Virus record (IMG/VR): IMGVR_UViG_3300042502_001233
Span: 1-64,000 of that record
Length of the DNA stretch: 64,000 nt
Direction: 5' to 3' (one strand)
Within the stretch, counting starts at the first letter, position 1. Each line of letters starts with the position of its first letter. The position numbers were made by a program, and so were the translations under genes. The notes below the pieces were generated by a model. It ran no database searches. It worked only from the letters and a program-made list of their open reading frames with translations, and had not been told where the DNA came from. Positions 13,770 through 59,227 of this stretch are shown piece after piece.

Positions 13770-14393
13770 TTAATTAAAAAGGCCAAAAAAAAAGTTGGAG
13801 TTTTTTTCATTAGGGTTATAAAATTTTGTTCTAATACTAACCAATAAGTTATTTACCAAATTCTTATCTACGTTGTTCGGTAGATTAGATTTTTCAAACA
13901 CTTCATCCATATTTTCAATGGCTTTGTCAGCGATTTCAATGAGCGAATCCAAATCAACTTCACCACGTCTAATCGTAAGAAGTTCTTGAGCATCTGGTCG
14001 TCTTACGATGATACCTTTACCTTCACCAATCTCAGTAGCCATTTTAATAAGACGCATACAGTGCATCATATTTTTACCATCAATTTTTTGGTGTTTGGAA
14101 CCATAAACTATTCCTTTTTGTAAACTAGCAACTATCAATTCGTGTTGTTGGTTTCCCGAAACAATTTCTGGTTTATAACCATAAATATCTTCAAACAAGT
14201 TTTTAGCTAATTGATAAGATTCATAATCTTCGTCAAGAGTTTCTTGCTCAAGGTTTTCTTTTTCTACAATATCAATTACTTTAAAAACTATTTCTTTAGG
14301 TGTAAAAAATGTTTTGTGTTCATTATTTTCTGAAACAGATTCTACCCATTCTAGATATTTTTTAAGTATTAATTCTTTATTAGTGTTTTTCAT
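13770..14393 (-). CDS. chimeric ORF carrying C-terminal part of a nucleotidyltransferase
   Basis: DGKNMMHCMRL...ELLTIRRG...SNLP is typical of the C-terminus of YcgL-like NTases. Confidence 0.6.
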   Translation of the reverse strand: MKNTNKELILKKYLEWVESVSENNEHKTFFTPKEIVFKVIDIVEKENLEQETLDEDYESYQLAKNLFEDIYGYKPEIVSGNQQHELIVASLQKGIVYGSKHQKIDGKNMMHCMRLIKMATEIGEGKGIIVRRPDAQELLTIRRGEVDLDSLIEIADKAIENMDEVFEKSNLPNNVDKNLVNNLLVSIRTKFYNPNEKNSNFFFGLFN

Positions 14394-14939: not shown

Positions 14940-15140
14940 TTACCCCATGTAATCCTTATTTACGTTGATTTGTTCTACATAACCAGTACCCAAGATATAA
15001 TCCTCAGGTAGAATGTAGACAAATTTCTTATCTACGTCACTTGTAGGTGTTTGGGTACCGTATGCTTGAGAACCGATAATGGTTTCAAACAAGATAAGTC
15101 CGTTCTCTACAAGAAACTCGTGTGTTAATTGTTTACTCAT
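14940..15140 (-). pseudogene. truncated N-terminus of pol-beta-family nucleotidyltransferase
   Basis: GSQAYGTQTPTSDVD motif, stop after 66 aa. Confidence 0.7.
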
Positions 15141-15206
15141 TTTAAATAATTTTTGCAAATATACTATTTTTATTTCTATTTACCAAATATTTATAAATAA
15201 AAGATT

Positions 15207-44290: not shown

Positions 44291-44350
44291 AATTTCTAAT
44301 TTTTTGTTTATTATAAATATACCACACTTTTAAAAAATGTAAAGTGTTTG

Positions 44351-44423
44351 TAGTTCTAATCGGACTCGAACCGATATCTCTCCGTTTTAGAGGCGGGTGT
44401 ATTCACGTTAATACTATAGAACC
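44351..44423 (-). tRNA. amber suppressor tRNA (anticodon CTA)
   Basis: GGTTCTA/TAGAACT acceptor, loop CT-CTA-AA, canonical T arm; weak anticodon stem. Confidence 0.8.
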
Positions 44424-44473: not shown

Positions 44474-44686
44474 CTAACTTTTTTTCAAAAATTTTCCAAG
44501 TCTTAAAACTTTCTCTTTAAATTCCTCAAAAGTTCCGTTGTTTTCAATGATGATATCAGCACATGTTTTGTCAATATCAAACGATGATGGGTCTTCCAAC
44601 GGAAGTCTTTCAGACGCATCAACCCAAATGATTATATCAAATAAACCTTGTCTCATACACTCGTTGATTTCAGCTCTATCTCGCAT
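44474..44686 (-). pseudogene. 3' half of interrupted dNMP kinase-like gene
   Basis: continues 50297..50590 at YVG|MRD; IIWVDA, ADIIIENNG. Confidence 0.75.
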
Positions 44687-45302
44687 CTAAAGATAATTCA
44701 ATAATTAAATCGTTAACAACTTTTTTTAACGCTTTAATGTCTTTTTTATCATTATAAATAACTTTACTAAAGTTAGTATAATCATCTAGATTAGTTTCTG
44801 AGATATGGTTTAAATCACGTAAGCTGTTCTCTCTAACACCCATTGGGTCGCCTTCCAGTCGAATTAAATAACCACCTTCTTTAAGGATATAGTCAGCTTC
44901 ATTAACAAATCTAACATCTGGTATCACAATAATTTTACCATTATTTAACTTAGTATCTAATTCTTCATTAAAGAATGATTTAACCCAAATATCAGTATCA
45001 TAATTATCTCTAAATAAATCAGTACCAACTAATTGTAATGTTTCACCAATAGTTTTATCAAATTGTTTAATAACTATATTTTTTTGGTCTTGAGTATAAT
45101 TACGAATCTCATTGCAGAATGGTTTATTAGCTTCATGAGTTGTCGTCATACGTATACCACTAATTATTTCCGTAATTAACCTTAATTTATCAGCCAATGC
45201 ATGTCTTTCTACTTTACCATGTAATTGCTCAGCTAATAATTCAGCAAAGGTATCTTTACCACTACCTATTTTTCCACTAATACCTATAATTTTTTTTTTC
45301 AT
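44676..45302 (-). CDS. deoxynucleoside monophosphate kinase (element-borne replacement)
   Basis: GISGKIGSGKDT, LQ.VGT..R, DVRF.NE, HISE. Confidence 0.85.
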   Translation of the reverse strand: MKKKIIGISGKIGSGKDTFAELLAEQLHGKVERHALADKLRLITEIISGIRMTTTHEANKPFCNEIRNYTQDQKNIVIKQFDKTIGETLQLVGTDLFRDNYDTDIWVKSFFNEELDTKLNNGKIIVIPDVRFVNEADYILKEGGYLIRLEGDPMGVRENSLRDLNHISETNLDDYTNFSKVIYNDKKDIKALKKVVNDLIIELSLDAR

Positions 45303-45305
45303 ATT

Positions 45306-48300
45306 TTACATTTTAAATGCTGTAACATAAATAAATTTATCACTTTCTCTTAAAACCAAGTTATCAAAACCTATTTCTAAAAGTATTCTTTTAAATTCAT
45401 CTTCATTATCTTTCCATTGATTGGCTGTTTCTGCAATCATGATTGGTTGCATAGTTCTCAATACTCTGTAAGCTTCTTTTAAATAATCTTCATAATTGCT
45501 ACCCATAAGTGATAAACTAAAAACAACAACATCTATAGATTCATCGTCTAAAGGTAATTTTGAAATATCACAAGCTATTACTGAATCATCAATGGCTACG
45601 TGGTCAAATGATAACACTTTGTTGGGTATTTCAGTTTTTAAAAGGTTTTCACCACATCCAAAATCACCAACAATATAATCTTTACGTTTAATTTGTTTAG
45701 CGATTTCTTTATATGGTATTTCTGACCAAGTTTTTCTAGCTTCACGATACAAAGTATGATACTGATACCACTCAGTTGGGTCCTCGGTTAATCGTTTGTT
45801 AGTTGTAATAGAATTTGATACACCCCAGCGTTTATTCATTTGACTGAACTCACCATATTTAGGTAGGTTATGATTAACATAATTTGGATTCAAAGGTATT
45901 TTAAATTCTTCTCTATCAAACGTGATAATCTCACCGTTGTTTAAACGATTAACCCATTCGGCCAACTCTTGTTGTGCTTCAAACACTAATCGTTCTCTTG
46001 AAGGTAGGAGATTTCTAGGAACACGCCCATCAATTGCTAAATCACCCAAAGTTGCTTTAAATCTAATTATATTATGTCTACGTCTGTCCCAACTCCAAAT
46101 ATGTTCGCCAGCTGGTATAATAACTTGTGGAATATAAATGTTAACTTTATCAAATTTAGAACCTTGTCTATTAACACGACCAACTAATTGGTCATATTCA
46201 GAACTGGTCCATGGAAGTACTATTGGTATCAATGTGTCACACACATATTGAATACCGTCTACACCAGTACCAACTGGTGCCGAACCAATTAAAACATCTA
46301 ATTTACCCTTTTTAAAAGCTTCTAAACCACTTTTATCGTCACCAGTATAAAATCCTATACTAAAACCTAAATCTTTTACGAATTTACCTATAATATCGGT
46401 TAATTCAGTAACATAATATGTGTATATTAAAGTCCCCCTTTTTATTTTATCTTTAACAGAATCAAGTTTAGTATTAATTAAAACTTTTTCGAACTCGCTA
46501 ACAGCACCTTTAGGTATTGCTATGATTTCATTAAACAAATGACTACCATCAGATTCTATGATTTCTTCGTTAACTGAAATACCATAATTAGGTTTATAAC
46601 GAAGACCATATCTTGTTAATGCTTTATACATTTCAATACCATTTACAATGTTTTCTTTGGTTTCTAATTCGTTATGAGATTCACCTGTTAACAATTCAAT
46701 TAATTTTTTAGGTTCTGTTAAATTGTTAATAATTGGTGTTGCCGACATAGCCATAACTAATAAATTTTCATTATCTTCTTTAGAGTTTATTATTAGTTTT
46801 TTAACAACATTCCTTCTAATAGATTCTTCGTTATCACGCTGCTTAACATTTTGAACTTCATCTAAAATTATGTAATCAATCTGATTATATTTTAACAATT
46901 CAGAAACAATATATTCACCATCTTCTAACTGAAACGTTTCATAATTTAATACTAAATAATTATAAACATTTTCTTTTAATTTTATGTTATGTTTATGAAC
47001 TAAATTATAATTAGAATTAACACCTTCTAATTCTTTCTTAACGTAAATCTGATTGTTAGTGAAATATTCATTTATGGACTCAACCCAGCCCTCAACAGTT
47101 GCATTATTACAAATTATTATAGTGTTTTTAGCACCAGCTAACCTACCAGCAAATATTGCAGATAAAGTTTTACCAGCACCAGTTCCAGACCAGTTACCGT
47201 ATTTTTTCTCTTTAATTAAACGATAACTAATTAGTTTTTGCATTAAGTTTGGCTGATGTTGAAAAATGTAATCACTTGGGGCGACTATTTTACAAACTTC
47301 TTCGTATTCACTAAAAAACCAGTCTTTAATTATTGTAAACCTTTCACCACCAGTTTCACCTCTTAAAGTATCAACATCTATTTGATTGTTAAGAACTTTA
47401 TTCCACAATTTTTTTAATTGATTCTTTAACAAGAAATCAATATTTTCATCATCCAAAGAAGCGGTAACCATTGTATTATCATACATATGTAATTCTTTAA
47501 TTGGGTCTAAAGGTGCTAATGACTCTGGTTCTTCTTCAGTAATTTCATCAACATTACCCTCAACTAAATCAACTTCTAAATTAGTTGGTTCGTTTAGAAT
47601 AGAATCATTGTTGGTGTCATCGTCAGACTCATCGTTTTCTAACGTATCTAATATATCGTGAATTAATCTTTCTCTTTCCTCCGAACCAGCTTCAGAAGAA
47701 GTTAAAGAATCTAATGACCCTATTTGTTGTATTTTTTTAGCGAGATTGTTTGAATTTATTATGGTTATTAGTTCAACTGAGTCCATATAAATTAAATCTT
47801 TTTCTAAAGATTTAATAAAGTCTAACATATAACGTTTATTCCAATAGTGACCATCACCTAAAGAACCTAACCAATCACCCATAGAAACCCACCCAGAATA
47901 TTTGTATGTTTTTTCTGGCATTGCTGGGATGTTGTCTGGTTTTTTTATGTTTTTCCATTCACTATAAGATTTAAGACCTAAAGTTCTAGCATATTCTCTA
48001 GCTTCTTCAAATGGTAAAAACTCCCTAAAATTTGATAACTTACCATGACCTAACCAATCACTCCAAGATACCCAACCAGATTCTTTATAAACTTGAGATG
48101 GTGATGCTGGAATTTCATCTGGTTTAGCTGAAGATTTAGAAAACAACCTCCATTCTTTTTCACCAGTTAATTTTAAACTTCTAGCATATTCTCTAGCTTC
48201 TTCAAATGGTAGATAATCTCTTTTGTTACATGATATGTAATTAGTTCCTAACCAATCACCCAGCGACACCCAACCAGAATCTTTATAAACCCTATCTGGG

Positions 48301-49202
48301 GCACTAGGTATATTATTTGGTCTTAATTCAGATTTAATAAATTCAACCCATTCCTTTTGTCGGGTTATATTTAATTTTCTAACATATTCTCTAGCCTCTT
48401 CAAACTGTAAAAATTTTTTATCAAAATTTGATAACTTACCGTGACCTAACCAATCAACCCAAGATACCCAACCAGAATCTTTATATGTTTTATTTGGTGA
48501 TTTAGGAATTTTAACATCATAATCGGTAGATTTTAAATATGTTCTAAACTCATTAGTGTTATTTAATTTTAAATTATGTATTATTTTCCTAGCTTCTTTA
48601 AAATCATAAAACTCATCAAAATCTTTTTTATAACCTAAAAAATCACCCCAAGATTTCCACCCATAATTTTTATACATTACGTGAGGTGAATAAGGTAAAC
48701 CATTCACATTTGTTTTGTTTAAATATTCATGATATTTAGTTTGTGATGTTAAACCTAAAATTTTAACTACGTTTTTGGCCTCTTCAAAGGATAAATAATT
48801 TCTATTTTTTAAAGCAACGTAATTAGTTCCTAACCAATCACCCAGCGACACCCAACCAGAATCTTTATATATTTTATCTGGCGATGTAGGTATGTTGTGA
48901 GGCCTTAATTCAGACTTATAAAAATTTTTCCAATCTTGTTGTGTTTTTAATCCTAAACTCTTAACAAAATTTTTAGCAATTTCAAAAGGTAGGTAACCGT
49001 CTTTTAGATTCACCGATGAACATTTAGTTTTATTTAACAAAGCATATGGTGTTATTAAATGTTCTGTATTAAACTTTTTATCAATAACCACCACTTTTTG
49101 GTTAGTATTGACATATTCGACTTTGGAATAATCATAATTATCGTTCCAATTACCACTATCTCTTAATTTTTGTAAAAACTCTTTTGTTTTATCAGTCATC
49201 AT
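45306..49202 (-). CDS. repeat-containing SF2 helicase fused to SAM methyltransferase
   Basis: 6 repeats PFEEAR...GWVSWGDWLG; GTGAGKT, DEVQ, SAT; DFGCGE, FSLSLMG. Confidence 0.8.
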   Translation of the reverse strand: MMTDKTKEFLQKLRDSGNWNDNYDYSKVEYVNTNQKVVVIDKKFNTEHLITPYALLNKTKCSSVNLKDGYLPFEIAKNFVKSLGLKTQQDWKNFYKSELRPHNIPTSPDKIYKDSGWVSLGDWLGTNYVALKNRNYLSFEEAKNVVKILGLTSQTKYHEYLNKTNVNGLPYSPHVMYKNYGWKSWGDFLGYKKDFDEFYDFKEARKIIHNLKLNNTNEFRTYLKSTDYDVKIPKSPNKTYKDSGWVSWVDWLGHGKLSNFDKKFLQFEEAREYVRKLNITRQKEWVEFIKSELRPNNIPSAPDRVYKDSGWVSLGDWLGTNYISCNKRDYLPFEEAREYARSLKLTGEKEWRLFSKSSAKPDEIPASPSQVYKESGWVSWSDWLGHGKLSNFREFLPFEEAREYARTLGLKSYSEWKNIKKPDNIPAMPEKTYKYSGWVSMGDWLGSLGDGHYWNKRYMLDFIKSLEKDLIYMDSVELITIINSNNLAKKIQQIGSLDSLTSSEAGSEERERLIHDILDTLENDESDDDTNNDSILNEPTNLEVDLVEGNVDEITEEEPESLAPLDPIKELHMYDNTMVTASLDDENIDFLLKNQLKKLWNKVLNNQIDVDTLRGETGGERFTIIKDWFFSEYEEVCKIVAPSDYIFQHQPNLMQKLISYRLIKEKKYGNWSGTGAGKTLSAIFAGRLAGAKNTIIICNNATVEGWVESINEYFTNNQIYVKKELEGVNSNYNLVHKHNIKLKENVYNYLVLNYETFQLEDGEYIVSELLKYNQIDYIILDEVQNVKQRDNEESIRRNVVKKLIINSKEDNENLLVMAMSATPIINNLTEPKKLIELLTGESHNELETKENIVNGIEMYKALTRYGLRYKPNYGISVNEEIIESDGSHLFNEIIAIPKGAVSEFEKVLINTKLDSVKDKIKRGTLIYTYYVTELTDIIGKFVKDLGFSIGFYTGDDKSGLEAFKKGKLDVLIGSAPVGTGVDGIQYVCDTLIPIVLPWTSSEYDQLVGRVNRQGSKFDKVNIYIPQVIIPAGEHIWSWDRRRHNIIRFKATLGDLAIDGRVPRNLLPSRERLVFEAQQELAEWVNRLNNGEIITFDREEFKIPLNPNYVNHNLPKYGEFSQMNKRWGVSNSITTNKRLTEDPTEWYQYHTLYREARKTWSEIPYKEIAKQIKRKDYIVGDFGCGENLLKTEIPNKVLSFDHVAIDDSVIACDISKLPLDDESIDVVVFSLSLMGSNYEDYLKEAYRVLRTMQPIMIAETANQWKDNEDEFKRILLEIGFDNLVLRESDKFIYVTAFKM

Positions 49203-49279
49203 TTATAAAATTTCTACAAAGATACGAATTAAAATTTACTTATTAAAGAAAAAGTCATATATTTATAATAAAAATTATT

Positions 49280-49420
49280 ATGAAGAAAGAAAATAAAATT
49301 ATTGGAATTGCTGTTGATAAAGAATTACTTAAAAAAGTTGACGCTGGAAACTATAACCGTTCTAAACTTATCGATGATTTGTTGACCAAACACTACGAAG
49401 AAAAAAAAGTTAAAAAATAA
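49280..49420 (+). CDS. small RHH-like protein
   Basis: MKKENKIIGIAV...NRSKLIDDLL; paralog of 54207..54347. Confidence 0.7.
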   Translation: MKKENKIIGIAVDKELLKKVDAGNYNRSKLIDDLLTKHYEEKKVKK

Positions 49421-49492
49421 TTCATAAATTTATGACTTTTTTAAATTTCCACGATATTTATAAGTATATAACATTTATTAATACTCATTATC

Positions 49493-49654
49493 ATGGGAAG
49501 AAAAGCAAAAATACAAGAAGAAAAGAAAGATAAAATTAGTATCTCTATCTCAAAAGAAAACTACGAAGCAATGGCTTCAGAAGGTATCAATAAGTCACAA
49601 CTAATCAATTGGTTGTTAGAACAACACTTTAATTTATTAAATTATGGAAAGTAA
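49493..49654 (+). CDS. small RHH-like protein
   Basis: MGRKAKIQEEKK...NKSQLINWLLEQHF; paralog of 54421..54588. Confidence 0.7.
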   Translation: MGRKAKIQEEKKDKISISISKENYEAMASEGINKSQLINWLLEQHFNLLNYGK

Positions 49655-50309
49655 AATTTGTAATACGTGTAATACTGAATTACCATTAGATAATTTTTCT
49701 AAAGACAATGCAACTAAAGATAAATTAAAAAATACATGTAAAAAATGTTCCTCAATTAAAAACGCTGAATGGAGAAAAAATAATAAAGAAAAAAGAAAAC
49801 AATACCATAAAGAATATCATAATAAAAATAAAGAAAAATTAAAAGAGTATAATAAAAAGATTAACAATGAATTTAAAAAAACACATGGTATATCTAGACA
49901 TACTTTATGGGATAGAGAGAATAAAGATAGACGTAAAGAATTATTGAAAATTAGACTAAAAAATCCAGTAGAGGCTTTAAAGTATAAATTAAGGAGTTCT
50001 TTAAATGCAATTTTTAGATATAACGGTTATACTAAAAAACATAAATCACACGATATTATAGGTTGTTCATATGAAGAATTTAAACAACACCTTGAATCTC
50101 AATTTGAACCTTGGATGAATTGGGATAATCGTGGGTTATATAATGGTGAGTTTAACTATGGTTGGGATATTGACCATATGGTACCATTATCAACGGCAAC
50201 AACTGAAGAAGAGTTAATTAATTTATGTCACTACACAAACACACAACCATTATGTAGTAAAGTTAATAGGGATATAAAGAAAAATAAAGTTGATTTTTAT
50301 CCAACATAA
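49644..50309 (+). CDS. HNH homing endonuclease
   Basis: WDIDHMVP...HYTNTQPLC..N. Confidence 0.85.
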   Translation: MESKICNTCNTELPLDNFSKDNATKDKLKNTCKKCSSIKNAEWRKNNKEKRKQYHKEYHNKNKEKLKEYNKKINNEFKKTHGISRHTLWDRENKDRRKELLKIRLKNPVEALKYKLRSSLNAIFRYNGYTKKHKSHDIIGCSYEEFKQHLESQFEPWMNWDNRGLYNGEFNYGWDIDHMVPLSTATTEEELINLCHYTNTQPLCSKVNRDIKKNKVDFYPT

Positions 50310-50590
50310 CAGTCAGAATGTTCCAAGATACCTTTGGCTAGTTTGGCTCTGTCATCTTTGTTGTAATCACAAATAAGTTCTTTCCATTCAGCTCTGTGGT
50401 TAACTCTATCCTCAAAACATTCTTCTGGTGTTGTATAACCATATTTGTCTTTAAGTGTGTTGTATAGAAATATATCAGCAGCGGCTTGTGATGATGATTT
50501 GAATGTTAACCCATAATTATCTCGCCATATTTCAGCTAACGTATCTTTCGCGTGGCGAGCGTGTCCGATTACCAGAATTTTTTTAAGCAT
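50297..50590 (-). pseudogene. 5' half of interrupted dNMP kinase-like gene
   Basis: P-loop GHARHAKDT; ends at the insertion junction. Confidence 0.75.
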
Positions 50591-51783: not shown

Positions 51784-51859
51784 ATTTTTAAGTTTTTTTT
51801 ACAAATATACTAAATCTTTTTCATATATGCAAATAAAAAAGGGGCAAATGCCCCTCTTA

Positions 51860-52183
51860 TTATGATAGAAGTTCGATTCTTCCTCTGGATATATCTTTAA
51901 GACTTGCAGTCTTGTTGGTTATGTGGTCAACTACCACCCCATCCTTGACTCTGTACGTTCTTCGTTTGTCGCTTCTGTCACCTTTACCGATTTGTTCACG
52001 TCTCTCGTCAACGCTTTCTTGTATGTGACCAGTTCTGTAATATTCGTTCACACGCTTTTTAAGCTCTTTTAAGGCATCTTCTTTGTTCTGGTGTTGATTC
52101 CTTCCATCTCGAACTACTTTGAGCCCTGTGGCCGCGTGTGTGACTACTACACATGAATCTGTGGTATTTTTGTGCTGACCACC
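51860..52183 (-). pseudogene. orphaned 3' part of release factor gene starting at GGQ
   Basis: GGQHKNTTDSCVVVTH...KRRTYRVKD...IELLS homologous to the end of 55208..55891. Confidence 0.88.
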
Positions 52184-52186
52184 AAA

Positions 52187-52510
52187 TTAAACGGCACGAT
52201 ATTCATTAAGCATTTTTTTAATATATTCCCAACAAATATTTGCGTTTTTAAATTCAACATCACCAAATTGACATAATCTCGTGTATTCTTCATCAATTTC
52301 ATTGGAAAATTTAGTGCTATATTTTTTCACATCATCTTTTGATAATTCGTAAAAACTAGGTAAACCATTTTTAACTAAAATATTAGAAAACGCTTCAATT
52401 CTAGTATCTTTATCACCACTATAAAAATGGTCAATCATCTGACAACGACTAGAAATAAGTTCTTCAACTACTTCTAAAGCTTTTATTTTATTTTTAATAT
52501 CTTTTTTCAC
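52187..52510 (-). CDS. hypothetical cargo protein
   Basis: 107-aa ORF following the GHKL gene. Confidence 0.6.
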   Translation of the reverse strand: MKKDIKNKIKALEVVEELISSRCQMIDHFYSGDKDTRIEAFSNILVKNGLPSFYELSKDDVKKYSTKFSNEIDEEYTRLCQFGDVEFKNANICWEYIKKMLNEYRAV

Positions 52511-52512
52511 GA

Positions 52513-54051
52513 TTAATAAATTATAAATTTTCGTAACCTTTCACTAACTTTAATGAAATATTCGGTTAACATTATTTCTTTTTCAGTATCATTATAATAC
52601 TCAATATCAGCTAAAGCCAACCCTAATGAAGCTAATAACTTAAAAGCTACATCTTTAGTTTCAAAGTTAGTTTTACTCATAAATTTAGACCAAAAAGGAT
52701 GTTCTTGATTTATTTCTAAAATATATAGACCTTGTTCTTTAACCGTTTTAAACATCAAACCATTTTCACCTAATTTAATAAATCTATAATCAAAAAATTT
52801 ATCATCTCTGACTCTAGTTTGATTTGGTTTACTTCCTGGTTTAACCGTTTCTTTCTTTTCAACTGGTGTCTCACGTTTTGTGTTCATACCCCTTTCTTTT
52901 TTAATATCAATAAAACGGTTATTATTGATACTTTTAGTTGACTCATCTAACTCTTTTTTAACATCCTCAGTCAACTCTATATTCAATGTTTGGTCTTCTC
53001 TACTTCTGATTGTTTTAATATAAGGTTGGATAGCATTTCTACAAATATCTTTAAACCCTTGGTCAATATCATTTTTATCCTTTTCATGTATCATTTTATT
53101 GAAAGTTGACCCGAATAAGTCATCACCACTACCATTAACAAATAATTCAATTCTAACACCATTAGAATACCCATCACCTATTTTACCCACAATACCTAAA
53201 TCCAAACCAGCCCCAACTAAACGTTTATTTCTATAAATATAAAGGCCAGCATTACTACTATTTCTACCAATTTTTGTTGATAATGAAGTACTAACACCTT
53301 CTAAATTATAAACACTAAATTTAATTTCATTCTCACCATAAACTATTTTTTCATTTGATGTGAGACATTTGGAGTAAAATTCTTTACGAAACATTGGGTC
53401 GAAAGATTCAACTAACTCATCGTTAACAAATAATTTAACATTTAATTCATCAATAAAATATTTGAAATATAAACTAAGTTTACTTTTTAAAATATCTTTA
53501 AAAATAGAAGGGTTTGAATTTGATACTTTATCAAGTTTATATAATTTAATAATAGTACCTGTATCAGAACCAACGTCTTCTTTAAACGATTCTAATTCTT
53601 CTGGAGTACCAGTTCTAATAGGAATAATAAAAGTATTTTGGTCTAACAAAACCTCTAAATCATAAGTGGCAATATATAATGAACCATTTTCACTTTTTGT
53701 TATCACATCAAAAGCTTTACCGATAGATAAGGCAGCAGCTTTAAGACCAGTACCATATGAACCTAAATCGAACTCTCTGTTTTTACCAGTTAAAGCACCA
53801 AGTTTAAATGCTTCTTTTAACGTTTCTAAATCCATACCACAACCATCATCACAAATTTTAATGTGGTCATACTCATCTTTGATTTTCTTAATTGTAATTT
53901 TAACGTTTTTTGAGTTAACGTTTGTGTCTAGTGAATTATCAATAATATCAGCAATTGCCGCATAATTATTGTAACCAGAATTTCTTAAAGTCGCTAAGAA
54001 ATTGACATTTGGAGTTACATCCAAACCATTTGTTTCGTTTAATTTTTCCAT
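52513..54051 (-). CDS. MORC-like GHKL ATPase
   Basis: AIADIIDNSLD, DDGCGM, GSYGTGLK, GT. Confidence 0.85.
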   Translation of the reverse strand: MEKLNETNGLDVTPNVNFLATLRNSGYNNYAAIADIIDNSLDTNVNSKNVKITIKKIKDEYDHIKICDDGCGMDLETLKEAFKLGALTGKNREFDLGSYGTGLKAAALSIGKAFDVITKSENGSLYIATYDLEVLLDQNTFIIPIRTGTPEELESFKEDVGSDTGTIIKLYKLDKVSNSNPSIFKDILKSKLSLYFKYFIDELNVKLFVNDELVESFDPMFRKEFYSKCLTSNEKIVYGENEIKFSVYNLEGVSTSLSTKIGRNSSNAGLYIYRNKRLVGAGLDLGIVGKIGDGYSNGVRIELFVNGSGDDLFGSTFNKMIHEKDKNDIDQGFKDICRNAIQPYIKTIRSREDQTLNIELTEDVKKELDESTKSINNNRFIDIKKERGMNTKRETPVEKKETVKPGSKPNQTRVRDDKFFDYRFIKLGENGLMFKTVKEQGLYILEINQEHPFWSKFMSKTNFETKDVAFKLLASLGLALADIEYYNDTEKEIMLTEYFIKVSERLRKFIIY

Positions 54052-54206
54052 AAATAAAAATTATTTTATATTTAATCGTATTATTTTACGCATTCTAAAT
54101 TTTTCAATTTAAAATACATGCAAAGATACTAACAATATCATCGCTTGTCAAGTTTTTTTCTATTTATTTTTAATTAATTTTCAATATATTTATTAAAAAC
54201 AAAACT

Positions 54207-54347
54207 ATGGACCAGAAAAAAATAAGCGTAGCATTATCACCAGAAGTTCTAAAACAATTAGAAGATAGTAACTATAATAAATCAAAATTAATCGATTCTT
54301 TATTAACTGAACACTTTAAAAAAGAAAATGAAAAAAAGTTAAAATAA
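54207..54347 (+). CDS. small RHH-like protein
   Basis: MDQKKISVAL...NKSKLIDSLL. Confidence 0.7.
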   Translation: MDQKKISVALSPEVLKQLEDSNYNKSKLIDSLLTEHFKKENEKKLK

Positions 54348-54420
54348 AAATCGCACTGGTACGACTTTTTTCTAATTTCTAGATATTTATAGATATAACA
54401 ATTATCTAACACAAAATATC

Positions 54421-54588
54421 ATGGGAAGAAAAGCAAAACTACAAGAAGAGAAAAAAGGTAAACTATCAATCACCATCTCATCCGATAACTATGAAATACT
54501 AGTTAATGAAAACATCAATAAATCTAAATTAATCGATTGGTTATTAGAACAACATTTTAACTCTTTAAACAATGGGAAGGGTGCTTAA
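54421..54588 (+). CDS. small RHH-like protein
   Basis: MGRKAKLQEEKK...NKSKLIDWLLEQHF. Confidence 0.7.
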   Translation: MGRKAKLQEEKKGKLSITISSDNYEILVNENINKSKLIDWLLEQHFNSLNNGKGA

Positions 54589-55195
54589 TGATGAACAGAA
54601 AAAAGCTAGAGCTGAATACCAAAAAGCTTGGCGAGAAGCTAATAAAGAACGTTTAGCTGAATGGCATAGAGAATATAGAAAGAATAACCCAGAAAAGAAC
54701 AAAACCAACACTAAAGCGTATAGAGAGCGTCACCCAGAAAAAGCAAAAGAATCAACTAAAAAATATAAAGCGAATAATCAAGACAAAATTAAAGCTGCAT
54801 CAATAGTGTATAGAGGTAGAAAACTTGAATTACATAATATCAAAAAAGCTAATGACCCAGTGTATAATTTAAAATGTACTGTTAGAAGCGGTATATTAAA
54901 ATCTTTCTCCAGAATCAACGCTAAGAAAAACAATAAAACAGTTGAAATTCTAGGATGTTCTTATGAGTTTTTAAAAGAACATATTGAATCAAAATTTGAA
55001 CCATGGATGACTTGGGGCAACAAAGGTCTTTATAATGGTGAATTAAACTACGGTTGGGATGTAGACCACATCATACCACTGGATACAGCGGTGACCGAAG
55101 AAGATGTGATTAGACTTAACCATTATACCAACCTACAACCACTTTGTAGTAAAATCAATCGAGATATTAAAAAAAATAACCCTAGTTACTACTAG
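54572..55195 (+). CDS. HNH homing endonuclease
   Basis: WDVDHIIP...HYTNLQPLC; close paralog of 49644..50309. Confidence 0.85.
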   Translation: MGRVLNDEQKKARAEYQKAWREANKERLAEWHREYRKNNPEKNKTNTKAYRERHPEKAKESTKKYKANNQDKIKAASIVYRGRKLELHNIKKANDPVYNLKCTVRSGILKSFSRINAKKNNKTVEILGCSYEFLKEHIESKFEPWMTWGNKGLYNGELNYGWDVDHIIPLDTAVTEEDVIRLNHYTNLQPLCSKINRDIKKNNPSYY

Positions 55196-55207
55196 GGTTA
55201 TTTATTA

Positions 55208-55891
55208 TTATGAAAGAAGCTCTATTTTACCTCTTAATATGTCTTTTAGACTAGCAGTCTTATTAGTGATATGGTCTACAACCATATCATCCTTTACACG
55301 ATAAGTCCTTCTTTTATCGGCACGACCACCTTCACCAATTTGTTCATTACGGTTTTCAATGGTTAATGAATCATGACCTGTTTTATAAAAGTTATTAACC
55401 CTTTGAGTTAATTCAGCAATCGCTGCTTCTTTATTTTGGTGTTGACTTCGACTATCACGTCTAACTTTAATCCCAGTTGCTATATGAGTTACAACAACAC
55501 ATGATTCAGTTTTATTCCTTTTTTGCCCACCGTTCCCAGTTCCTCTGGTTGTTTCCAAACGATATTCACTAGGATGTAATTCTACTTCCTTATAATCGTT
55601 TTCTTCCATAAGTGCTACGGTGATTGAACTTGTATGAACCCTACCTTTTCTTTCGGTTGGTGGTACTCTTTGCCACCTATGTGAACCTACATGGTTTAAG
55701 AACACATTTTTAACATTATATCCAGATATTCAGATAGTTATCATACCATCTTTCTCATCAATAACTTTAGCTTCAAATGAATAATTTTTGCAAGCTTTTA
55801 AAAAAATATCTCGCATATCTTTAATTAATAATTTTGAATCATCACCGCCTTCTGACGCTCTTAATTCTAATAAAATTTTATTTGTTTTCAT
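55208..55891 (-). CDS. class I peptide chain release factor-like protein (no domain 1) with in-frame TGA at codon 54
   Basis: LELRASEGG..., HRWQRVPPTERKGRVHTS, GGQ; frame continuous across TGA 55730-55732. Confidence 0.85.
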
Positions 55892-56669
55892 TGTATTTTG
55901 GTCTATTTAAATTGCCTTCATATATAACACCGTTTATTTCCCTTGTTGTTCCCCACATTGGTCTAAGATTCGATAAAGCGTTTACCACACTGGCTGGAGT
56001 TTCTGGTGGAAAACTAATAATTTGTTTTATATGGTCTATGTGCCATTCTCCATAATTATCCCATGTCATTCCGTCAGTAAATAAGTTTGTGATATGTTCT
56101 TTAAATTCTAAAGCTGAATAGCCTAACATATCTATGGTCTTACCAGTTTTTTTGTTATGTAAATCACGTAGCGAATTTTTTAATATTCGCCTCCAAGCTA
56201 TTACGTGTGGGTTTTTTTGATTATATAATTTAGCGTTTTCTTTTATTTTTTCTTTATTATTTTTTCTATATTCTTTACCGTAAGCTGATTTTTTTTCACG
56301 ATTATCTATTAAATATTGTTTGTCATACGCTTTTTTCTTTTCTTTATTTAACGCAACGTATTCTTTATTTTTTTGTTTAACATATTCAATATTTTCTTTA
56401 CGATATTCTTTTTGATAATTATTTCGTTTATCTTTATTTTCCAAACGGTGGTTAATAAAATACTCATTTAACTTTTCTTTATTCTTTTCCCTATACTTTG
56501 CATCGAGTAACTTCTTTTTTTGTAAAGAAACATCACTATGGATTTTCACATCAGGATATAACTCCCTTAACTGTTTAACCGTTAAATTGTGTGATTTTAA
56601 ATGTTTGGTCGATAATGAAGATAAATCTTTTCCACATACTGGACAAGTTACAAATGAAGATGGTTCCAT
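55878..56669 (-). CDS. HNH homing endonuclease
   Basis: CPVC..HL..H, K/E repeats, WHIDHI...NLRPMW..N. Confidence 0.85.
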   Translation of the reverse strand: MEPSSFVTCPVCGKDLSSLSTKHLKSHNLTVKQLRELYPDVKIHSDVSLQKKKLLDAKYREKNKEKLNEYFINHRLENKDKRNNYQKEYRKENIEYVKQKNKEYVALNKEKKKAYDKQYLIDNREKKSAYGKEYRKNNKEKIKENAKLYNQKNPHVIAWRRILKNSLRDLHNKKTGKTIDMLGYSALEFKEHITNLFTDGMTWDNYGEWHIDHIKQIISFPPETPASVVNALSNLRPMWGTTREINGVIYEGNLNRPKYNENK

Positions 56670-56731
56670 AATATTCTTTTATAATAAATATCACAAATAA
56701 TTAAAAAAACCACAAATGGCAAAGAATTCCA

Positions 56732-56926
56732 TTCGTTCTTAAAGATTTCTTTTGCGTTTTTACCCGTTAGTCAGATGCTAACAAATCCTAACCTATCTTC
56801 GGTTATTATTCAGTCGATGTTATTGTTCTTCGCTGTTTTAATGTAAATGTCGCGCATTTCACAAACCAACAGCTTCGCATCGGTTCCACCTTCTGCGTCT
56901 CGGATTTCTAAATTAATTTTTCCCAT
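56732..56926 (-). pseudogene. orphaned original 5' part of release factor gene (two in-frame TGA)
   Basis: MGKINLEIRDAEGGTDAK...ID*II...FVSI*LTGKNAKEIFKNE. Confidence 0.85.
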
Positions 56927-57053: not shown

Positions 57054-57057
57054 CTAG

Positions 57058-57145
57058 TTGCGGAAGTAGGACTCGAACCTACAACACAGTGTTACTGCTC
57101 CTCTAGGTTATGAGCCTAGCATGTTTCCATTTCCACCATTCCGCG
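57058..57145 (-). tRNA. tRNA-Met(CAT), initiator-like C1:A72, long variable arm
   Basis: CTAGG-CTCATAA-CCTAG + 20-nt variable arm. Confidence 0.8.
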
Positions 57146-57152
57146 ATGTATT

Positions 57153-57812
57153 TTATTTTCTACCCTTAACCCAACCTTCGTTCAGATAAGTTTCAAGGTT
57201 TTCTTTTTTTATCTTTTTGTTAGCACCGTCTCTGGTTATCCAACACGTACCGTATTGACTATTTGTTTCACCAATACCAGTACCTTTTCTTTTTTCAGAG
57301 ATTAAACGTTTAGATTCTTCAGCATGATTTTTACCAGTCCAATCTAGATTTTTTAATTTATTCTGTCTGTATTCTTCATTTTCCCAAGCTATTTTATTAA
57401 CATGAGAATTGAATCTACTTAACCAGTTTTCATCACCACCGAACTTTTCTTTTAAAACTTCGTCAGTTTTTTTTCTACCAGCTTTAACACATTTAAACAT
57501 ATGTTCTTCATTGATAAAACCACCACCTTCACCACCAAGAGCCAAATTCATACATTTGGAATCTGAAATTAATTCTTTATTAACAATTTCTTTTTCTCTT
57601 TTAGCTAATTCTTCTCTATTTTCTAAAAATTCTAGAATCTCTTTTGTGTGATTTTCTTTACCGTATTTTCTAATAGAACGTCTTAATGTTTTACCACTAC
57701 CTATATAACCATCTTCTAAGTTATACGTGCTATGCATTCCGATGTACCATCGTCCTGTTATATTACACGTTGTTTTATAAATGTAGTGTATGTTTTTTTC
57801 TTTTCTTGCCAT
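57153..57812 (-). CDS. GIY-YIG (Seg-like) homing endonuclease
   Basis: paralog of 36217..36849. Confidence 0.88.
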   Translation of the reverse strand: MARKEKNIHYIYKTTCNITGRWYIGMHSTYNLEDGYIGSGKTLRRSIRKYGKENHTKEILEFLENREELAKREKEIVNKELISDSKCMNLALGGEGGGFINEEHMFKCVKAGRKKTDEVLKEKFGGDENWLSRFNSHVNKIAWENEEYRQNKLKNLDWTGKNHAEESKRLISEKRKGTGIGETNSQYGTCWITRDGANKKIKKENLETYLNEGWVKGRK

Positions 57813-57870
57813 TTCAATTTCTTTAATAATAAATATCTCAGAAAACTGAAAAGTACAAAAAAGTCTCCAG

Positions 57871-57943
57871 TTGCGGGGGCACGACTCGAACGTGCGACCT
57901 CAAGGTTATGAGCCTTGCGAGCTACCTACTGCTCTACCCCGCG
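57871..57943 (-). tRNA. tRNA-fMet(CAT)
   Basis: CGCGGGG start, C1:A72. Confidence 0.92.
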
Positions 57944-58849: not shown

Positions 58850-59227
58850 TGGTGGAGTTATGGGGAATCGAACCCCAGTGTTGCATATTCTTCAAAAGCT
58901 TTCTACATGTTTATCTAGTTTCTAATTCTAGCAAAGTTGTGCTGCGTTATTTATCCCGATGGAAGTGCAGCGACCATCGTTCCTTTTTTTACAACTAGGA
59001 AGTTGGTTCTTGGTGATTTATCACCATCAAGTGGAATTACCACTATTAGCTATAATTAGGCTACAGCTACCTCTCCTGCGAAACTGAATGCAGCTTCGTT
59101 AAGGAAATTTTCAGAAACGATGAAATCGTTGTCAATTCAATTTTTTAATAGACAGATTAAAGTGCTTCCAATCTAGCACTACATGCTTACGATTTACGAC
59201 TATATCCAGTCAATACCGTTTAACCCC
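58850..59227 (-). ncRNA. ssrA: tmRNA
   Basis: GGGGTTA/TAACTCC-A-CCA acceptor with G3:U70, T arm, tag ORF DNDFIVSENFLNEAAFSFAGEVAVA*. Confidence 0.9.

What the first reader, a model, noticed from the sequence alone, without database searches (positions are those of the whole stretch)
51860..55530. Sister element inserted at the RF GGQ codons carrying a MORC-like ATPase
Same module as above: paralogous RHH pair and a closely related HNH on +, cargo divergent on -. The target and cargo differ (GHKL ATPase + 107-aa ORF). The orphan RF tail starts exactly at GGT GGT CAG. Prokaryotic MORC ATPases are typically linked to restriction or defence loci. Together the two elements define a family of cargo-bearing homing islands.
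Basis: partly seen in the sequence, partly recalled or inferred. Interest (0 to 1): 0.72.

Follow-up and report, generated by a model that had tools for sequence, protein, structure and literature searches.

The report
Cargo-bearing homing island in phage RF
A 3.3-kb selfish cassette (a nuclease gene led by two small DNA-binding genes) sits exactly at the catalytic GGQ codons of a giant lake phage's release-factor gene, bringing a spare gene end that keeps the gene whole and a MORC-like ATPase as passenger; related cassettes carry other passengers, including an anti-immunity gene, into other genes of related phages.

Summary
The window is part of a 362-kb, 31% GC lake-water phage. A relative (L002) has an uninterrupted RF1-like gene. 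Here 3,348 bp (52184-55531) lie between ...GTGN and GGQ. They hold a foreign RF 3' end (C') fused in frame, a terminator, HNH2, RHHb and RHHa on the + strand, a MORC-like GHKL ATPase and orf107. The resident tail, starting at GGT GGT CAG, is left as an orphan.

The orphan is 82% identical to L002 and C' only 64%. Against a second carrier (L054, same junction), the cargo is much less diverged (pS 0.40) than the orphan tails (pS 0.70). The island is therefore younger than its backbones.

The same ATPase cassette lies beside homing-endonuclease genes in four other places: a tmRNA gene, a vWA-like gene tail, and both ends of an RlaP-like gene. At the RF site other phages carry other cargo. At the RlaP site the slot is empty, or holds an Acb3-like CBASS inhibitor or the ATPase.

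The RHH pair precedes HNH, GIY-YIG, LAGLIDADG and zinc-finger nucleases in 41 viral loci.

Cleavage at GGQ and the ATPase's role are inferred, not shown. This is a new variant of the known HEG-islands and mitochondrial hybrid genes.

The parts
51837..51858 (-). Intrinsic terminator of the resident RF gene. It now ends the ATPase-orf107-orphan transcript.
   Evidence: Terminator scan. The hairpin follows the TAA TAA of the orphan tail.
51860..52183 (-). Orphan resident RF tail, from GGQ to the stop codon (107 codons, no start codon, no internal stop).
   Evidence: - Pfam RF-1, E 2.6e-18.
- 82.4% DNA identity to the uninterrupted RF of L002.
- pS 0.455 and dN/dS 0.15 against L002.
52184..52189 (-). 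Right junction of the island: the TAA stop of orf107 plus TTT, then resident GGT GGT CAG.
   Evidence: The same junction is seen in:
- L054 (TAA TTT TGT GGT CAA);
- L058 (TAA TT AGT GGT CAA), behind an unrelated cargo gene.
52187..52510 (-). orf107, second cargo gene. No family hit.
   Evidence: - No Pfam, NCBIfam or PHROG hit.
- Only 5 homologues in 5.8 billion proteins.
- In every contig looked up it lies directly after the ATPase.
52513..54051 (-). MORC-like GHKL ATPase (512 aa), first cargo gene.
   Evidence: - HATPase_c_3, E 3e-21.
- PDB profile hits to MORC4, MORC3 and MORC2, E 1e-17 to 1e-13.
- AF2 model, pLDDT 83. Foldseek top hits are the MORC3, MORC4 and MORC2 ATPase modules, about 400 aligned columns.
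- More than 100 homologue clusters, many on contigs of 100-460 kb.
54052..54206 (.). Divergent control region. It holds a promoter-like TTGACA-17-TATCTT for the ATPase and the border between the cargo cassette and the RHH cassette, at about 54153-54163.
   Evidence: - Promoter scan.
- Homology to L010 (ATPase cassette) ends at 54153.
- Homology to L014, L057 and L079 (RHH cassette) starts at 54160-54163.
54207..54347 (+). RHH2a, a small ribbon-helix-helix-like protein.
   Evidence: - Weak CcdA (RHH) hit, E 0.0014.
- Paralogue of RHHb.
- 89% identical to the RHHa of L014, whose cassette sits in a different gene.
54421..54588 (+). RHH2b, a small RHH-like protein. Its end overlaps the start of HNH2.
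   Evidence: RHHb-like ORFs also overlap the start of HNH genes at genome positions 83780, 264051 and 312760.
54572..55195 (+). HNH2, the putative homing endonuclease. It converges on the RF 3' end.
   Evidence: - Invariant D-H...N...N motif across 13 relatives.
- PHROG endonuclease VII, E 2e-7.
- Pfam HNH only E 0.01.
- VIA best match is the Gme HNH nicking endonuclease, Z 4.6.
- About 10 paralogues in the genome.
- An 81% relative lies next to the RF 3' end in L058.
55174..55203 (.). Two-way terminator hairpin between RF-B and HNH2. It is part of the imported segment.
   Evidence: The same hairpin follows the HNH2 relative in L057.
55208..55531 (-). Imported RF 3' end (C'), from GGQ to the stop codon, fused in frame to the resident middle part.
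   Evidence: - 64% DNA identity to L002 and 66% to the orphan.
- Synonymous sites saturated: pS 0.90 and 0.82.
- Its last 140 nt are 85-90% identical to the RF end next to HNH2 in L058.
55532..55700 (-). Resident middle part of the RF, with the PxT-type tripeptide PPT.
   Evidence: - 80% DNA identity to L002, 85% in its core.
- pS 0.66.
- Best matched by the RF1 (prfA) models.
55701..55891 (-). Imported RF 5' end (N'), with an in-frame TGA at 55732-55730.
   Evidence: 49% DNA identity to L002, against 65% for the N-terminal orphan. Sequence.
55878..56669 (-). HNH3, a second endonuclease gene from a distant branch of the same family. It lies directly upstream of N'.
   Evidence: HNH3-like nucleases follow RHH pairs in L014, L015, L023 and L026.
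56732..56926 (-). Orphan resident RF 5' end (about 65 codons, two in-frame TGA at 56812-56810 and 56773-56771).
   Evidence: -.
- 76% DNA identity to the RF 5' end of L058.
- 65% DNA identity to L002.
44687..50296 (.). Sister island 1. It holds HNH1, RHH1b and RHH1a (+), and a SNF2-methyltransferase of 1298 aa and a 208-aa kinase paralogue (-). It is inserted cleanly between codons G97 and M98 of a P-loop kinase-like gene.
   Evidence: - L002 has the intact 166-aa gene.
- The two halves lie at 50590..50297 and 44686..44474.
- The junction alignment shows no target duplication.
- Pfam and NCBIfam hits.

Best explanation
Coordinates 52184-55531 are a homing-endonuclease island inside the phage's RF1-like release-factor gene.

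Proposed mechanism (inferred):
1. During co-infection, HNH2 cuts the island-free RF allele at or beside the GGQ codons.
2. The break is repaired from an island-bearing genome.
3. The left end pairs in the conserved RF middle part. The right end pairs with the RF tail.
4. Everything between these two arms is copied: the imported RF 3' end, the terminator, HNH2, RHHb, RHHa, the ATPase and orf107.

Consequences:
- The imported 3' end restores a full-length RF. It differs from the resident sequence straight after the GGQ codons, so it is presumably not cut.
- The resident tail is pushed downstream as an orphan, which also serves as the right homology arm for later transfers.

The cassette is modular:
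- A swappable nuclease gene sets the target.
- A conserved RHHa/RHHb pair most likely controls expression of the cassette. It does not choose the target.
- A slot between RHHa and the duplicated target segment holds passenger genes.

Here the passengers are a MORC-like GHKL ATPase and orf107. I take them to be a phage conflict or accessory module that gains mobility from the nuclease. In return it may help keep the cassette in the population.

What is shown: the insertion, the chimeric gene, the orphan, recurrence at other sites, variable cargo, and the younger age of the island.

What is inferred: cleavage at GGQ, immunity of the imported end, the regulatory role of the RHH pair, and the ATPase's function.
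For: Insertion and origin of the two tails:
- L002 has an uninterrupted RF gene and an uninterrupted kinase-like gene.
- DNA identity to L002 is 82% for the orphan tail, 80% for the RF-B middle, 64% for RF-B C' and 49% for RF-B N'.
- Synonymous divergence to L002 is pS 0.455 for the orphan and pS 0.90 for C'.

The island is younger than its backbones:
- L054 has the same junction.
- Window versus L054: ATPase pS 0.40 and orf107 pS 0.39, but orphan tails pS 0.705 and the downstream flank 67.6% identical.
- L014 versus L015: the endonuclease cassette is 92% identical, the flanks 76-84%.

The same architecture recurs elsewhere:
- L012: a tmRNA gene is split, with a complete foreign tmRNA, an HNH-RHHb-RHHa cassette and the ATPase. 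The RHHb-RHHa-ATPase stretch is 79.7% identical in DNA to the window.
- L010: the tail of a vWA-like gene is duplicated around a GIY-YIG gene plus the ATPase.
- L056: ATPase and orf107 are followed by an orphan RlaP tail.
- The P0003 contig: an RlaP fragment, then HNH, RHHb and RHHa (judged by gene size and order), then the ATPase.

Variable cargo at one site:
- RF site: ATPase plus orf107 in the window and L054; a 133-aa nucleoside deoxyribosyltransferase-like gene in L058, which has no RHH pair.
- RlaP site: no cargo in L015, Acb3-like in L014, the ATPase in the P0003 contig.

The RHH pair is a general leader:
- In 41 viral loci it is followed by HNH, GIY-YIG, LAGLIDADG or DUF723/DUF4379 proteins.
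- RHHa is 89% identical between the window and L014, although their nucleases are about 36% identical and the targets differ.

No other mobility function:
- The island has no integrase or transposase gene and no terminal repeats.
- Both junctions are confirmed in independent runs.
Against: - No cleavage data exist. The cut site is inferred from where the orphan starts.
- HNH2 reaches no curated family cut-off. Pfam HNH gives E 0.01, a PDB profile search finds nothing, and fold matches have Z below 5.
- An 88% relative of HNH2 (L057) has the same hairpin, but a gene end beside it that does not look like RF. Adjacency is therefore not a perfect guide to the target.
- No island-free RF allele was seen in the four lake runs examined.
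- The RF-B middle part has pS 0.66 to L002, between the orphan and C'. The left crossover is therefore less sharply defined than the right one.
- The orphan has stayed open for 107 codons in the window and L054. I explain this by recent capture of functional tails, but selection on the orphan is not excluded.
- The ATPase has Asp where GHKL enzymes have the catalytic Glu, and its role is unknown.
Confidence: 0.75

Rival explanations
1. The cargo is a passive bystander. HNH2 is an ordinary free-standing homing endonuclease gene downstream of RF. The ATPase, orf107 and the orphan came from one accidental one-sided repair event, or from separate insertions. There is no cargo slot and no family of cargo islands.
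For: - L058 shows HNH2 next to RF without an RHH pair or the ATPase.
- Other HNH copies in this genome are solo or RHHb+HNH units between genes, with no cargo.
- The ATPase occurs without any endonuclease gene nearby in L009.
- The HEG-islands described earlier have no discrete boundaries (PMC10448857).
Against: - The ATPase cassette lies beside an endonuclease gene in five different gene contexts, each time flanked by a duplicated target segment.
- L058 itself has an orphan RF tail and another cargo gene at the same junction.
- At the RlaP site the slot is empty, holds Acb3 or holds the ATPase, with the same cassette each time.
Confidence: 0.12
2. The ATPase, orf107, the RHH pair and HNH2 form one functional conflict system: a MORC/Mza-like sensor ATPase, an HNH effector and RHH regulators. 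It merely happens to lie in the RF gene, and its mobility is secondary.
For: - The ATPase's best defence-family hit is MzaB: PADLOC E 1.8e-20, NCBIfam E 1.7e-25.
- GHKL domains also head the BbrUII/HgiDII restriction enzymes.
- The divergent gene order with a shared control region is conserved in the window, L012 and the P0003 contig.
Against: - The NCBIfam MzaB score is 89 bits against a cut-off of 850, and no MzaA, C, D or E gene is present.
- The ATPase occurs with a GIY-YIG gene instead (L010) and with no nuclease gene (L009).
- The same RHH-HNH cassettes occur with unrelated cargo or none.
- The module border at about 54153-54163 separates the two parts.
Confidence: 0.08
3. Two tandem RF paralogues decayed in place, by duplication and then loss of parts. 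No mobile element was involved.
For: Two N-terminal and two C-terminal RF pieces lie within 5 kb.
Against: - There is only one middle part, and the two orphans complement it exactly.
- A relative has a single intact gene at this place.
- The two tails are saturated at synonymous sites relative to each other, yet the orphan is close to L002.
- The cargo is younger than the flanks.
- The same pattern occurs at a tmRNA gene, a vWA-like gene and an RlaP-like gene.
Confidence: 0.02
4. The island was integrated by a site-specific recombinase or transposase acting in trans. This would resemble prophages that insert into a gene's 3' end and carry a replacement end.
For: The replacement 3' end plus a displaced native end resembles integrative elements in tRNA or icd genes (my own knowledge). 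A short motif, TTTAATT, recurs at the right end in the window, L054, L058 and L010.
Against: - The island has no recombinase gene, no inverted or direct terminal repeats, and no att-like duplication beyond the gene segment itself.
- The only shared mobility-related genes across all islands are homing-type nucleases.
Confidence: 0.03

Closest known systems
HEG-islands of ICP1-like phages (Barth, Dunham and Seed 2023, PMC10448857)
   Same: - Homing endonuclease genes sit at the borders of exchanged segments.
- They mobilise neighbouring 'cargo' genes between diverged phages.
- Nuclease genes are interchangeable at one locus.
- Islands are more conserved than the rest of the genome.
- Here RF-B itself is bracketed by HNH3 and HNH2, as in that model.
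   Different: Those islands have two or more flanking nuclease genes, essential core genes as cargo and no discrete boundaries. Here:
- one cassette carries accessory genes in a defined slot;
- it is inserted inside a gene at a base-precise junction;
- it brings a replacement gene segment and leaves an orphan;
- it has a conserved RHH-pair leader, which that work does not describe.
Mobile endonuclease ORFs that create hybrid genes in fungal mitochondria (Allomyces atp6, Paquin et al. 1994; Glomus atp6/atp9/cox2/nad3, PMC3630166)
   Same: - An endonuclease ORF plus a foreign C-terminal copy is fused in phase to the native gene.
- The native C-terminus is displaced downstream.
- The native copy is closer to the sister species than the inserted one: 91-98% against 64-81% there, 82% against 64% here.
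   Different: - The genome type differs: phage, not mitochondrion.
- Here the nuclease gene is on the opposite strand and is not fused to the host gene.
- Extra passenger genes are carried.
- 5'-end and whole-gene (tmRNA) replacements also occur.
Free-standing Seg and Mob endonucleases of T4-like phages (marker exclusion, mobE trans-homing, SegB tRNA region; my own knowledge, and PMC13096335 for SegB and anti-defence loci, abstract only)
   Same: - Intron-less nuclease genes lie between or beside conserved genes.
- They cut the allele of a co-infecting relative.
- They drive co-conversion of flanking markers.
- They are linked to accessory or anti-defence loci.
   Different: - T4 elements usually replace homologous sequence without leaving orphans.
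- They have no RHH leader.
- No cargo slot has been described for them.
Prokaryotic MORC/GHKL ATPases of conflict systems (MzaB; GHKL heads of BbrUII/HgiDII enzymes; Iyer, Abhiman and Aravind 2008, my own knowledge)
   Same: - GHKL ATP-binding motifs.
- A MORC-like GHKL plus S5 two-domain fold.
- Nearest defence-family profile is MzaB.
   Different: - The score is far below the MzaB cut-off.
- No partner Mza genes are present.
- The family is phage-borne.
- It has its own C-terminal domain (residues about 420-512) with no match.
- The catalytic Glu is replaced by Asp.

Membership tests
Free-standing homing endonuclease element | Encodes a nuclease of a recognised homing class (HNH / His-Me finger). 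| tested here: inconclusive
   For membership:
- The D-H...N...N motif is invariant in 13 relatives.
- PHROG endonuclease VII, E 2e-7.
- HNH nucleases rank first and third of 48,161 chains in the VIA search, but with Z of only 4.6 and 4.0.

Against:
- Pfam HNH gives E 0.01, below the cut-off.
- The PDB profile search finds nothing.
Free-standing homing endonuclease element | Presence/absence polymorphism at one defined site among related genomes. | tested here: met
   - L002 has the empty RF site.
- The window, L001, L054 and L058 have it occupied at the same junction.
Free-standing homing endonuclease element | The element is less diverged than its flanks, showing horizontal spread. | tested here: met
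   - Cargo pS 0.39-0.40, against orphan tails pS 0.705 and a flank 67.6% identical.
- Cassette 92% identical, against flanks 76-84%, in L014 versus L015.
Free-standing homing endonuclease element | The nuclease cuts the element-free allele and spares the occupied one. | not testable with these tools
   Only indirect evidence is available. The orphan starts at GGQ, and the imported copy differs from the resident sequence straight after the GGQ codons.
HEG-island (Barth et al. 2023) | Two or more endonuclease genes flank cargo of essential genes; no discrete boundaries. | tested here: not met
   - RF-B is indeed flanked by HNH3 and HNH2.
- The ATPase part, however, is carried by a single cassette, is accessory, and has base-precise junctions.
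- Definition taken.
Mitochondrial-type hybrid gene made by a mobile endonuclease ORF | A foreign C-terminal copy is in phase with the native gene, the native C-terminus is displaced, and the native copy is nearer to the sister genome. | tested here: met
   - C' is in frame from GGQ.
- The orphan lies downstream.
- 82% against 64% identity to L002.
- Criteria.
MORC-type GHKL ATPase | Bergerat-fold ATP-binding motifs (N box, DxGxG, GxxGxG, GT). | tested here: met
   N39, D68, G70, G72, G97, G100, G102 and G165 are invariant and T166 nearly invariant in 39 homologues. HATPase_c_3, E 3e-21.
MORC-type GHKL ATPase | GHKL domain followed by an S5-fold transducer domain, as in MORC2, MORC3 and MORC4. 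| tested here: met
   Foldseek top hits are 6o1e, 7k7t, 5ix1/5ix2 and 9cdh, with E about 1e-17, about 390-415 aligned columns and TM by target 0.55-0.59.
MORC-type GHKL ATPase | Catalytic Glu in motif I. | tested here: not met
   The position is Asp (D35, nearly invariant in the family). ATP hydrolysis is untested.
Mza anti-phage system (MzaB) | Reaches the MzaB model cut-off and is accompanied by the other Mza genes. | tested here: not met
   NCBIfam MzaB scores 89 bits against a cut-off of 850. No Mza partner was found among the six proteins scanned with PADLOC.
Ribbon-helix-helix (Arc/CopG/CcdA-like) DNA-binding proteins | A small strand-helix-helix unit that pairs into a dimer. | tested here: inconclusive
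   - RHH2a hits CcdA at E 0.0014, below the cut-off. RHH2b has no hit.
- Conserved N..S.L..LL..H pattern.
- Predicted RHHa-RHHb pairing gets only weak support. The score is 0.46 and the best control 0.04.
- In the tool's calibration, 51 of 78 solved complexes and 2 of 108 mismatched pairs reached the mark. Passes scoring 0.60 or under are more often wrong than right.
Class I release factor RF1 | PxT-type recognition tripeptide, GGQ motif, and full domain set 1-4. | tested here: not met
   - PPT and GGQ are present.
- prfA is the best model, E 8.7e-46. It covers only positions about 104-347 of 347 and scores 157 bits against a cut-off of 400.
- Domain 1 is absent and the ORF holds an in-frame TGA.

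The most novel reading that the evidence does not exclude
RHHa-RHHb-led cassettes are a distinct, widespread class of modular mobile element in large and huge phages. Each has three parts:
- a conserved two-gene leader;
- an exchangeable nuclease of any of at least four homing classes;
- a defined cargo slot.

They enter conserved genes at their most constrained codons, such as the RF GGQ, tmRNA and the RNA-repair gene RlaP. They repair those genes with an uncuttable imported segment. In this way they shuttle defence and counter-defence genes between phages that share little else. The cargo seen so far includes an Acb3-like CBASS inhibitor, a MORC-like ATPase, a SNF2-methyltransferase and a Cas3-like helicase.
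Probability: 0.45. Interest if true: 0.82.

Novelty: new variant of a known kind. Interest (0 to 1): 0.72.

Why it matters
How phages exchange accessory and anti-immunity genes without integrases or transposases is poorly understood. These islands give a concrete route with boundaries defined to the base. A homing nuclease opens a conserved gene, and whatever lies between the two copies of the target segment is copied in. The gene survives because a replacement piece comes along.

The islands offer several things:
- natural series with the same site and different cargo, and with the same cargo at different sites, which make the idea testable;
- a simple search handle (the RHH pair) for mining unknown conflict genes in huge phages;
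- nucleases that probably recognise extremely conserved sequences, such as the GGQ-coding region. These are of interest as tools.

The case also shows that 'pseudogene' fragments of translation genes in phage genomes can be scars that date and locate homing events.

Tried and rejected
- **Alternative genetic code (TGA as sense) to explain the in-frame TGA of the RF: rejected genome-wide.** Table 11 gives 95% coding. ORFs ending in TGA are followed by another stop after a median of 5.5 codons, and the RF is the outlier at 173. No tRNA(TCA) is present. I therefore named no other code, and the TGA stays unexplained.
- **Near relatives in the annotated phage collection.** Only one weak hit was found, to the HNH part: LR756502.1, a 642-kb uncultured phage.
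- **Terminal repeats or att-like sites at the island ends.** None were found.
- **HNH fold by Foldseek.** All hits have E above 1. The PDB profile search was empty.
- **Island-free RF allele.** I looked for it as a joint in four lake-water runs. None was seen, but the contigs are short and shallow, so this says little.
- **orf107 function.** No family hit in Pfam, PHROGs or NCBIfam. One PADLOC match (type II methyltransferase, E 0.00093) I judged to be noise.
- **The ATPase's small partner ORF is not conserved.** It is orf107 in the window, L054 and L056, an unrelated protein of 145-147 aa in L010 and L012, and a 138-aa ORF of unknown sequence in the P0003 contig.
- **The reading frame shared by orf107's TAA and the orphan is a coincidence.** L058 has one base fewer at the junction.
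- **HNH2 relative next to a non-RF gene end.** L057 has an 88% relative of HNH2 beside a gene end that is not RF-like. I could not identify that gene from its 26 residues.

Full report
**Setting.** The window is the first 64 kb of a single 362,018-bp contig with 31.4% G+C.
- The standard code gives 95% coding.
- Nearly all genes in the window lie on the - strand.
- The genome has 45 tRNA genes, 32 of them in the window.
- It encodes a tmRNA at 58850-59227, ClpP- and DnaJ-type genes, and many nuclease genes on the opposite strand.
- Near-identical sequence occurs in lake-water metagenomes from 2020-2024.
- The only hit in the annotated phage collection is a 642-kb uncultured phage.

This is a huge freshwater phage.

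**The observation.** On the - strand, the region from 56926 down to 51837 reads in this order:
1. an RF 5' fragment (56926..56732);
2. HNH3 (56669..55878);
3. a full-length RF1-like ORF, called RF-B here (55891..55208, GGQ at 55531-55523, in-frame TGA at 55732-55730);
4. a two-way terminator hairpin;
5. HNH2, RHH2b and RHH2a on the opposite strand (55195..54207);
6. a 155-bp divergent control region;
7. a 512-aa GHKL ATPase (54051..52513);
8. orf107 (52510..52187);
9. three bases later, an RF fragment that begins GGT GGT CAG and runs 107 codons to TAA TAA and a terminator (52183..51837).

The upstream module at 49280-50309 is a true paralogue: RHHb 72%, RHHa about 50% and HNH about 51% identical in protein.

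**What a relative shows.** L002 is a 107-kb viral contig with the same gene order (DnaJ, metallopeptidase-like, ClpP, tmRNA, tRNAs, RF, kinase-like gene). It has one uninterrupted RF gene and one uninterrupted 166-aa P-loop kinase-like gene. Aligning its RF with the window's four RF pieces gives this pattern:

| Piece | DNA identity to L002 |
|---|---|
| Orphan tail | 82.4% |
| RF-B middle | 80.4% (85% in its core) |
| N-terminal orphan | 65% |
| RF-B 3' part | 64.2% |
| RF-B 5' part | 49% |

Synonymous divergence agrees: pS 0.455 for the orphan tail and 0.896 (saturated) for the RF-B 3' part. The two orphans end and begin exactly where the foreign parts of RF-B begin and end.

The present RF gene is thus a chimera of three parts: an imported 5' end next to HNH3, a resident middle, and an imported 3' end next to HNH2. 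The island of the finding is 52184-55531 (3,348 bp). It includes the imported GGQ-to-stop segment.

**Sister island.** The kinase-like gene of L002 is split in the window between Gly97 and Met98. The two halves lie at 50590..50297 and 44686..44474. Between them lie 5.6 kb holding HNH1, RHH1b, RHH1a, a 1298-aa SNF2-helicase-methyltransferase and a 208-aa kinase paralogue. There is no target duplication.

**Is it mobile?** Three kinds of evidence say yes.

*First, the island is younger than its backbones.* L054, from another lake sample, carries the ATPase, orf107 and an RF orphan with the same junction (TAA TTT TGT GGT CAA). Between the window and L054 the values are:
- ATPase, pS 0.40;
- orf107, pS 0.39;
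- orphan tails, pS 0.705, with differences starting at the first codons;
- downstream flank, 67.6% identical.

Each genome thus kept its own resident tail and received a more recent island at the same site.

*Second, the same ATPase cassette lies in other genes of related phages, always beside a homing-type nuclease gene and always flanked by a duplicated piece of the target.*
- **L012.** The resident tmRNA gene is split after about 60 nt. The island holds a complete foreign tmRNA (Rfam, 63 bits), an HNH, RHHb, RHHa, the ATPase and two small ORFs. The resident tmRNA 3' part follows. The RHHb-RHHa-ATPase stretch is 79.7% identical in DNA to the window, and the HNH only about 73-75%.
- **L010.** A replacement C-terminus of a vWA-like gene, a terminator, a GIY-YIG gene, the ATPase (82.8% identical including about 100 bp of promoter) and a 145-aa ORF are followed by the resident tail.
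- **L056.** The ATPase and orf107 are followed by an orphan C-tail of an RlaP-like RNA-repair nucleotidyltransferase gene.
- **The P0003 contig.** An RlaP fragment is followed by genes with the sizes and order of HNH, RHHb and RHHa, then the ATPase (no DNA was available).

*Third, cargo varies at a fixed site.*
- At the RF GGQ junction, L058 has an 81% relative of HNH2. It has no RHH pair. A 133-aa nucleoside-deoxyribosyltransferase-like gene takes the place of the ATPase, and an orphan RF tail follows.
- At the RlaP 5' site, the same cassette (92% identical, flanks 76-84%) has no cargo in L015. It has a 252-aa Acb3-like CBASS inhibitor (Pfam, E 2e-35) in L014.

**The module.** An alignment of the RHH proteins retrieved 41 viral loci.
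- The pair is almost always followed, with overlapping stop and start, by a third gene on the same strand.
- That gene may be HNH of two subfamilies, GIY-YIG with NUMOD3, LAGLIDADG, or DUF723/DUF4379 zinc-finger proteins, one of them with DUF2726.
- The cassette usually lies antisense to its neighbours.
- RHHa of the window is 89% identical to that of L014, although the nucleases are about 36% identical and the targets differ.
- The RHH pair of island 1 is 98-100% identical to that of L024, where the nuclease is of another class.

The RHH proteins therefore cannot choose the target. I infer that they regulate the cassette.

A structure-based pairing test gave only weak support for an RHHa-RHHb dimer. 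The score was 0.46 and the best control 0.04. In the tool's calibration, 51 of 78 solved complexes and 2 of 108 mismatched pairs reached the mark, and passes scoring 0.60 or under are more often wrong than right.

Homology breakpoints place the border between the cargo cassette and the RHH cassette at 54153-54163.

In this genome, about 10 HNH paralogues exist. Three more have an overlapping RHHb-like ORF but no RHHa and no cargo.

**The cargo.**
- The ATPase has the GHKL motifs.
- Its closest solved relatives, by profile and by fold, are the MORC4, MORC3 and MORC2 ATPase modules.
- MzaB is the nearest defence-family model, but far below its cut-off and without partner genes.
- The family has more than 100 clusters, many on contigs of 100-460 kb.
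- Motif I has Asp in place of the usual Glu.
- The C-terminal 90 residues match nothing.
- orf107 is rare and of unknown function.

Other cargo next to RHHa includes the Acb3-like gene, a Cas3-like HD-helicase, an Eco57I-like methylase and SNF2-methyltransferases. That spectrum suggests a role in phage-host or phage-phage conflict. The suggestion is an inference.

**Mechanism proposed.**
1. HNH2 cuts island-free RF genes at or next to the GGQ codons.
2. The left end invades the donor's RF and the right end pairs with the donor's orphan tail.
3. The intervening DNA is copied.
4. The first such insertion must have joined the right end without homology, which created the orphan.

The imported tail diverges from the resident sequence immediately after the junction and is presumably immune.

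No integrase, transposase or terminal repeat is present. Independent runs confirm both junctions.

**Weak points.**
- There is no cleavage evidence.
- HNH2 fails curated thresholds.
- One HNH2 relative lies next to a gene end that is not RF-like.
- No empty allele was seen in the sampled runs.
- The left crossover is blurred.

**Comparison with what is known.**
- 'HEG-islands', in which flanking nuclease genes mobilise essential cargo without discrete boundaries, were described in ICP1-like phages (PMC10448857).
- Endonuclease ORFs that bring a foreign C-terminus and displace the native one are known from fungal mitochondria (PMC3630166 and Paquin et al. 1994).

The present islands combine both ideas and add an RHH leader, a cargo slot, accessory and anti-defence cargo, and 5'-end and whole-gene replacements. 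I found no paper describing this. I therefore rate it a new variant of a known kind.

Noticed in passing
window 55730-55732, 56810-56812, 56771-56773; L058:1277-1960; L002:7950-7990: The RF1-like gene has in-frame TGA codons.
- RF-B has one. The N-terminal orphan has two, and so does the intact RF of L058, at the same positions.
- In L002 both positions are Cys TGT.
- In L002 the frame must shift +1 at CTT TAG C. This resembles the prfB CUU UGA C site, but with the stop codon that RF1 reads.
- TGA is not recoded genome-wide and no tRNA(TCA) exists.

This may be autoregulation by read-through or frameshifting. It remains unexplained.
   Followed up: partly
window 55878-56926: A second homing event in the same RF gene. 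HNH3, with an imported RF 5' end directly downstream, has displaced the resident 5' end, which survives as an orphan at 56926..56732.
   Followed up: partly
window 44474-50590: Island 1 splits a kinase-like gene exactly between Gly97 and Met98.
- The island supplies the stop codon for the first half.
- The second half starts at the native Met, so the gene may still work in two pieces.
- The island also carries a 208-aa kinase paralogue.
   Followed up: partly
window 13770-15158: The window's own RlaP-like gene is scrambled. A 72-aa N-terminal fragment lies at 15158..14940, and the C-terminal part is fused to unrelated sequence in the 207-aa ORF at 14393..13770. Relatives carry homing islands in this gene.
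   Followed up: partly
window 58850-59227 (-); L012:3870-4309 and 7831-8140: The phage encodes a tmRNA (Rfam, 63 bits) that ARAGORN missed in the window. In L012 the resident tmRNA gene is split by an island that brings a complete foreign tmRNA.
   Followed up: yes
window 52184-52192; L054:2030-2045; L058:125-140; L010:2964-2980: The right end of four islands reads TTTAATT directly before the resident target sequence. The four islands have three unrelated last genes, two targets and two nuclease classes. In each, the join is 2-3 nt after a TAA stop. This could be chance in AT-rich DNA, microhomology (both targets have TGGT) or a conserved island end.
   Followed up: partly
window 44350-44423 and 5320-5393: A tRNA with anticodon CTA (an amber suppressor by anticodon) and a tRNA-like gene that ARAGORN reads with a four-base anticodon. 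A few gene pairs in the genome are bridged by a single in-frame TAG, for example near 263455-263976.
   Followed up: no
window 57153-57812 (-), between tRNA-Met genes at 57057-57145 and 57870-57943: A GIY-YIG-type endonuclease gene sits between two tRNA-Met genes. It has paralogues in the genome at about 304891 (66% identical), 36223 (51%) and 200314.
   Followed up: no
window 47866-48991 (N-terminal part of the 1298-aa ORF): Five tandem 'integrase repeat unit' (INT_rpt) copies head the SNF2-methyltransferase. The same repeats occur in the proteins of about 300 aa that follow RHH pairs in L024, L025 and L030, and in several opposite-strand singleton genes of this genome at about 143.7, 148.5, 163.7, 295 and 332 kb.
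   Followed up: no
window 52513-54051 (residue 35 of the ATPase): The GHKL motif I reads DIIDN. It has Asp where MutL, Hsp90 and MORC have the catalytic Glu, and this Asp is nearly invariant across 39 homologues.
   Followed up: no
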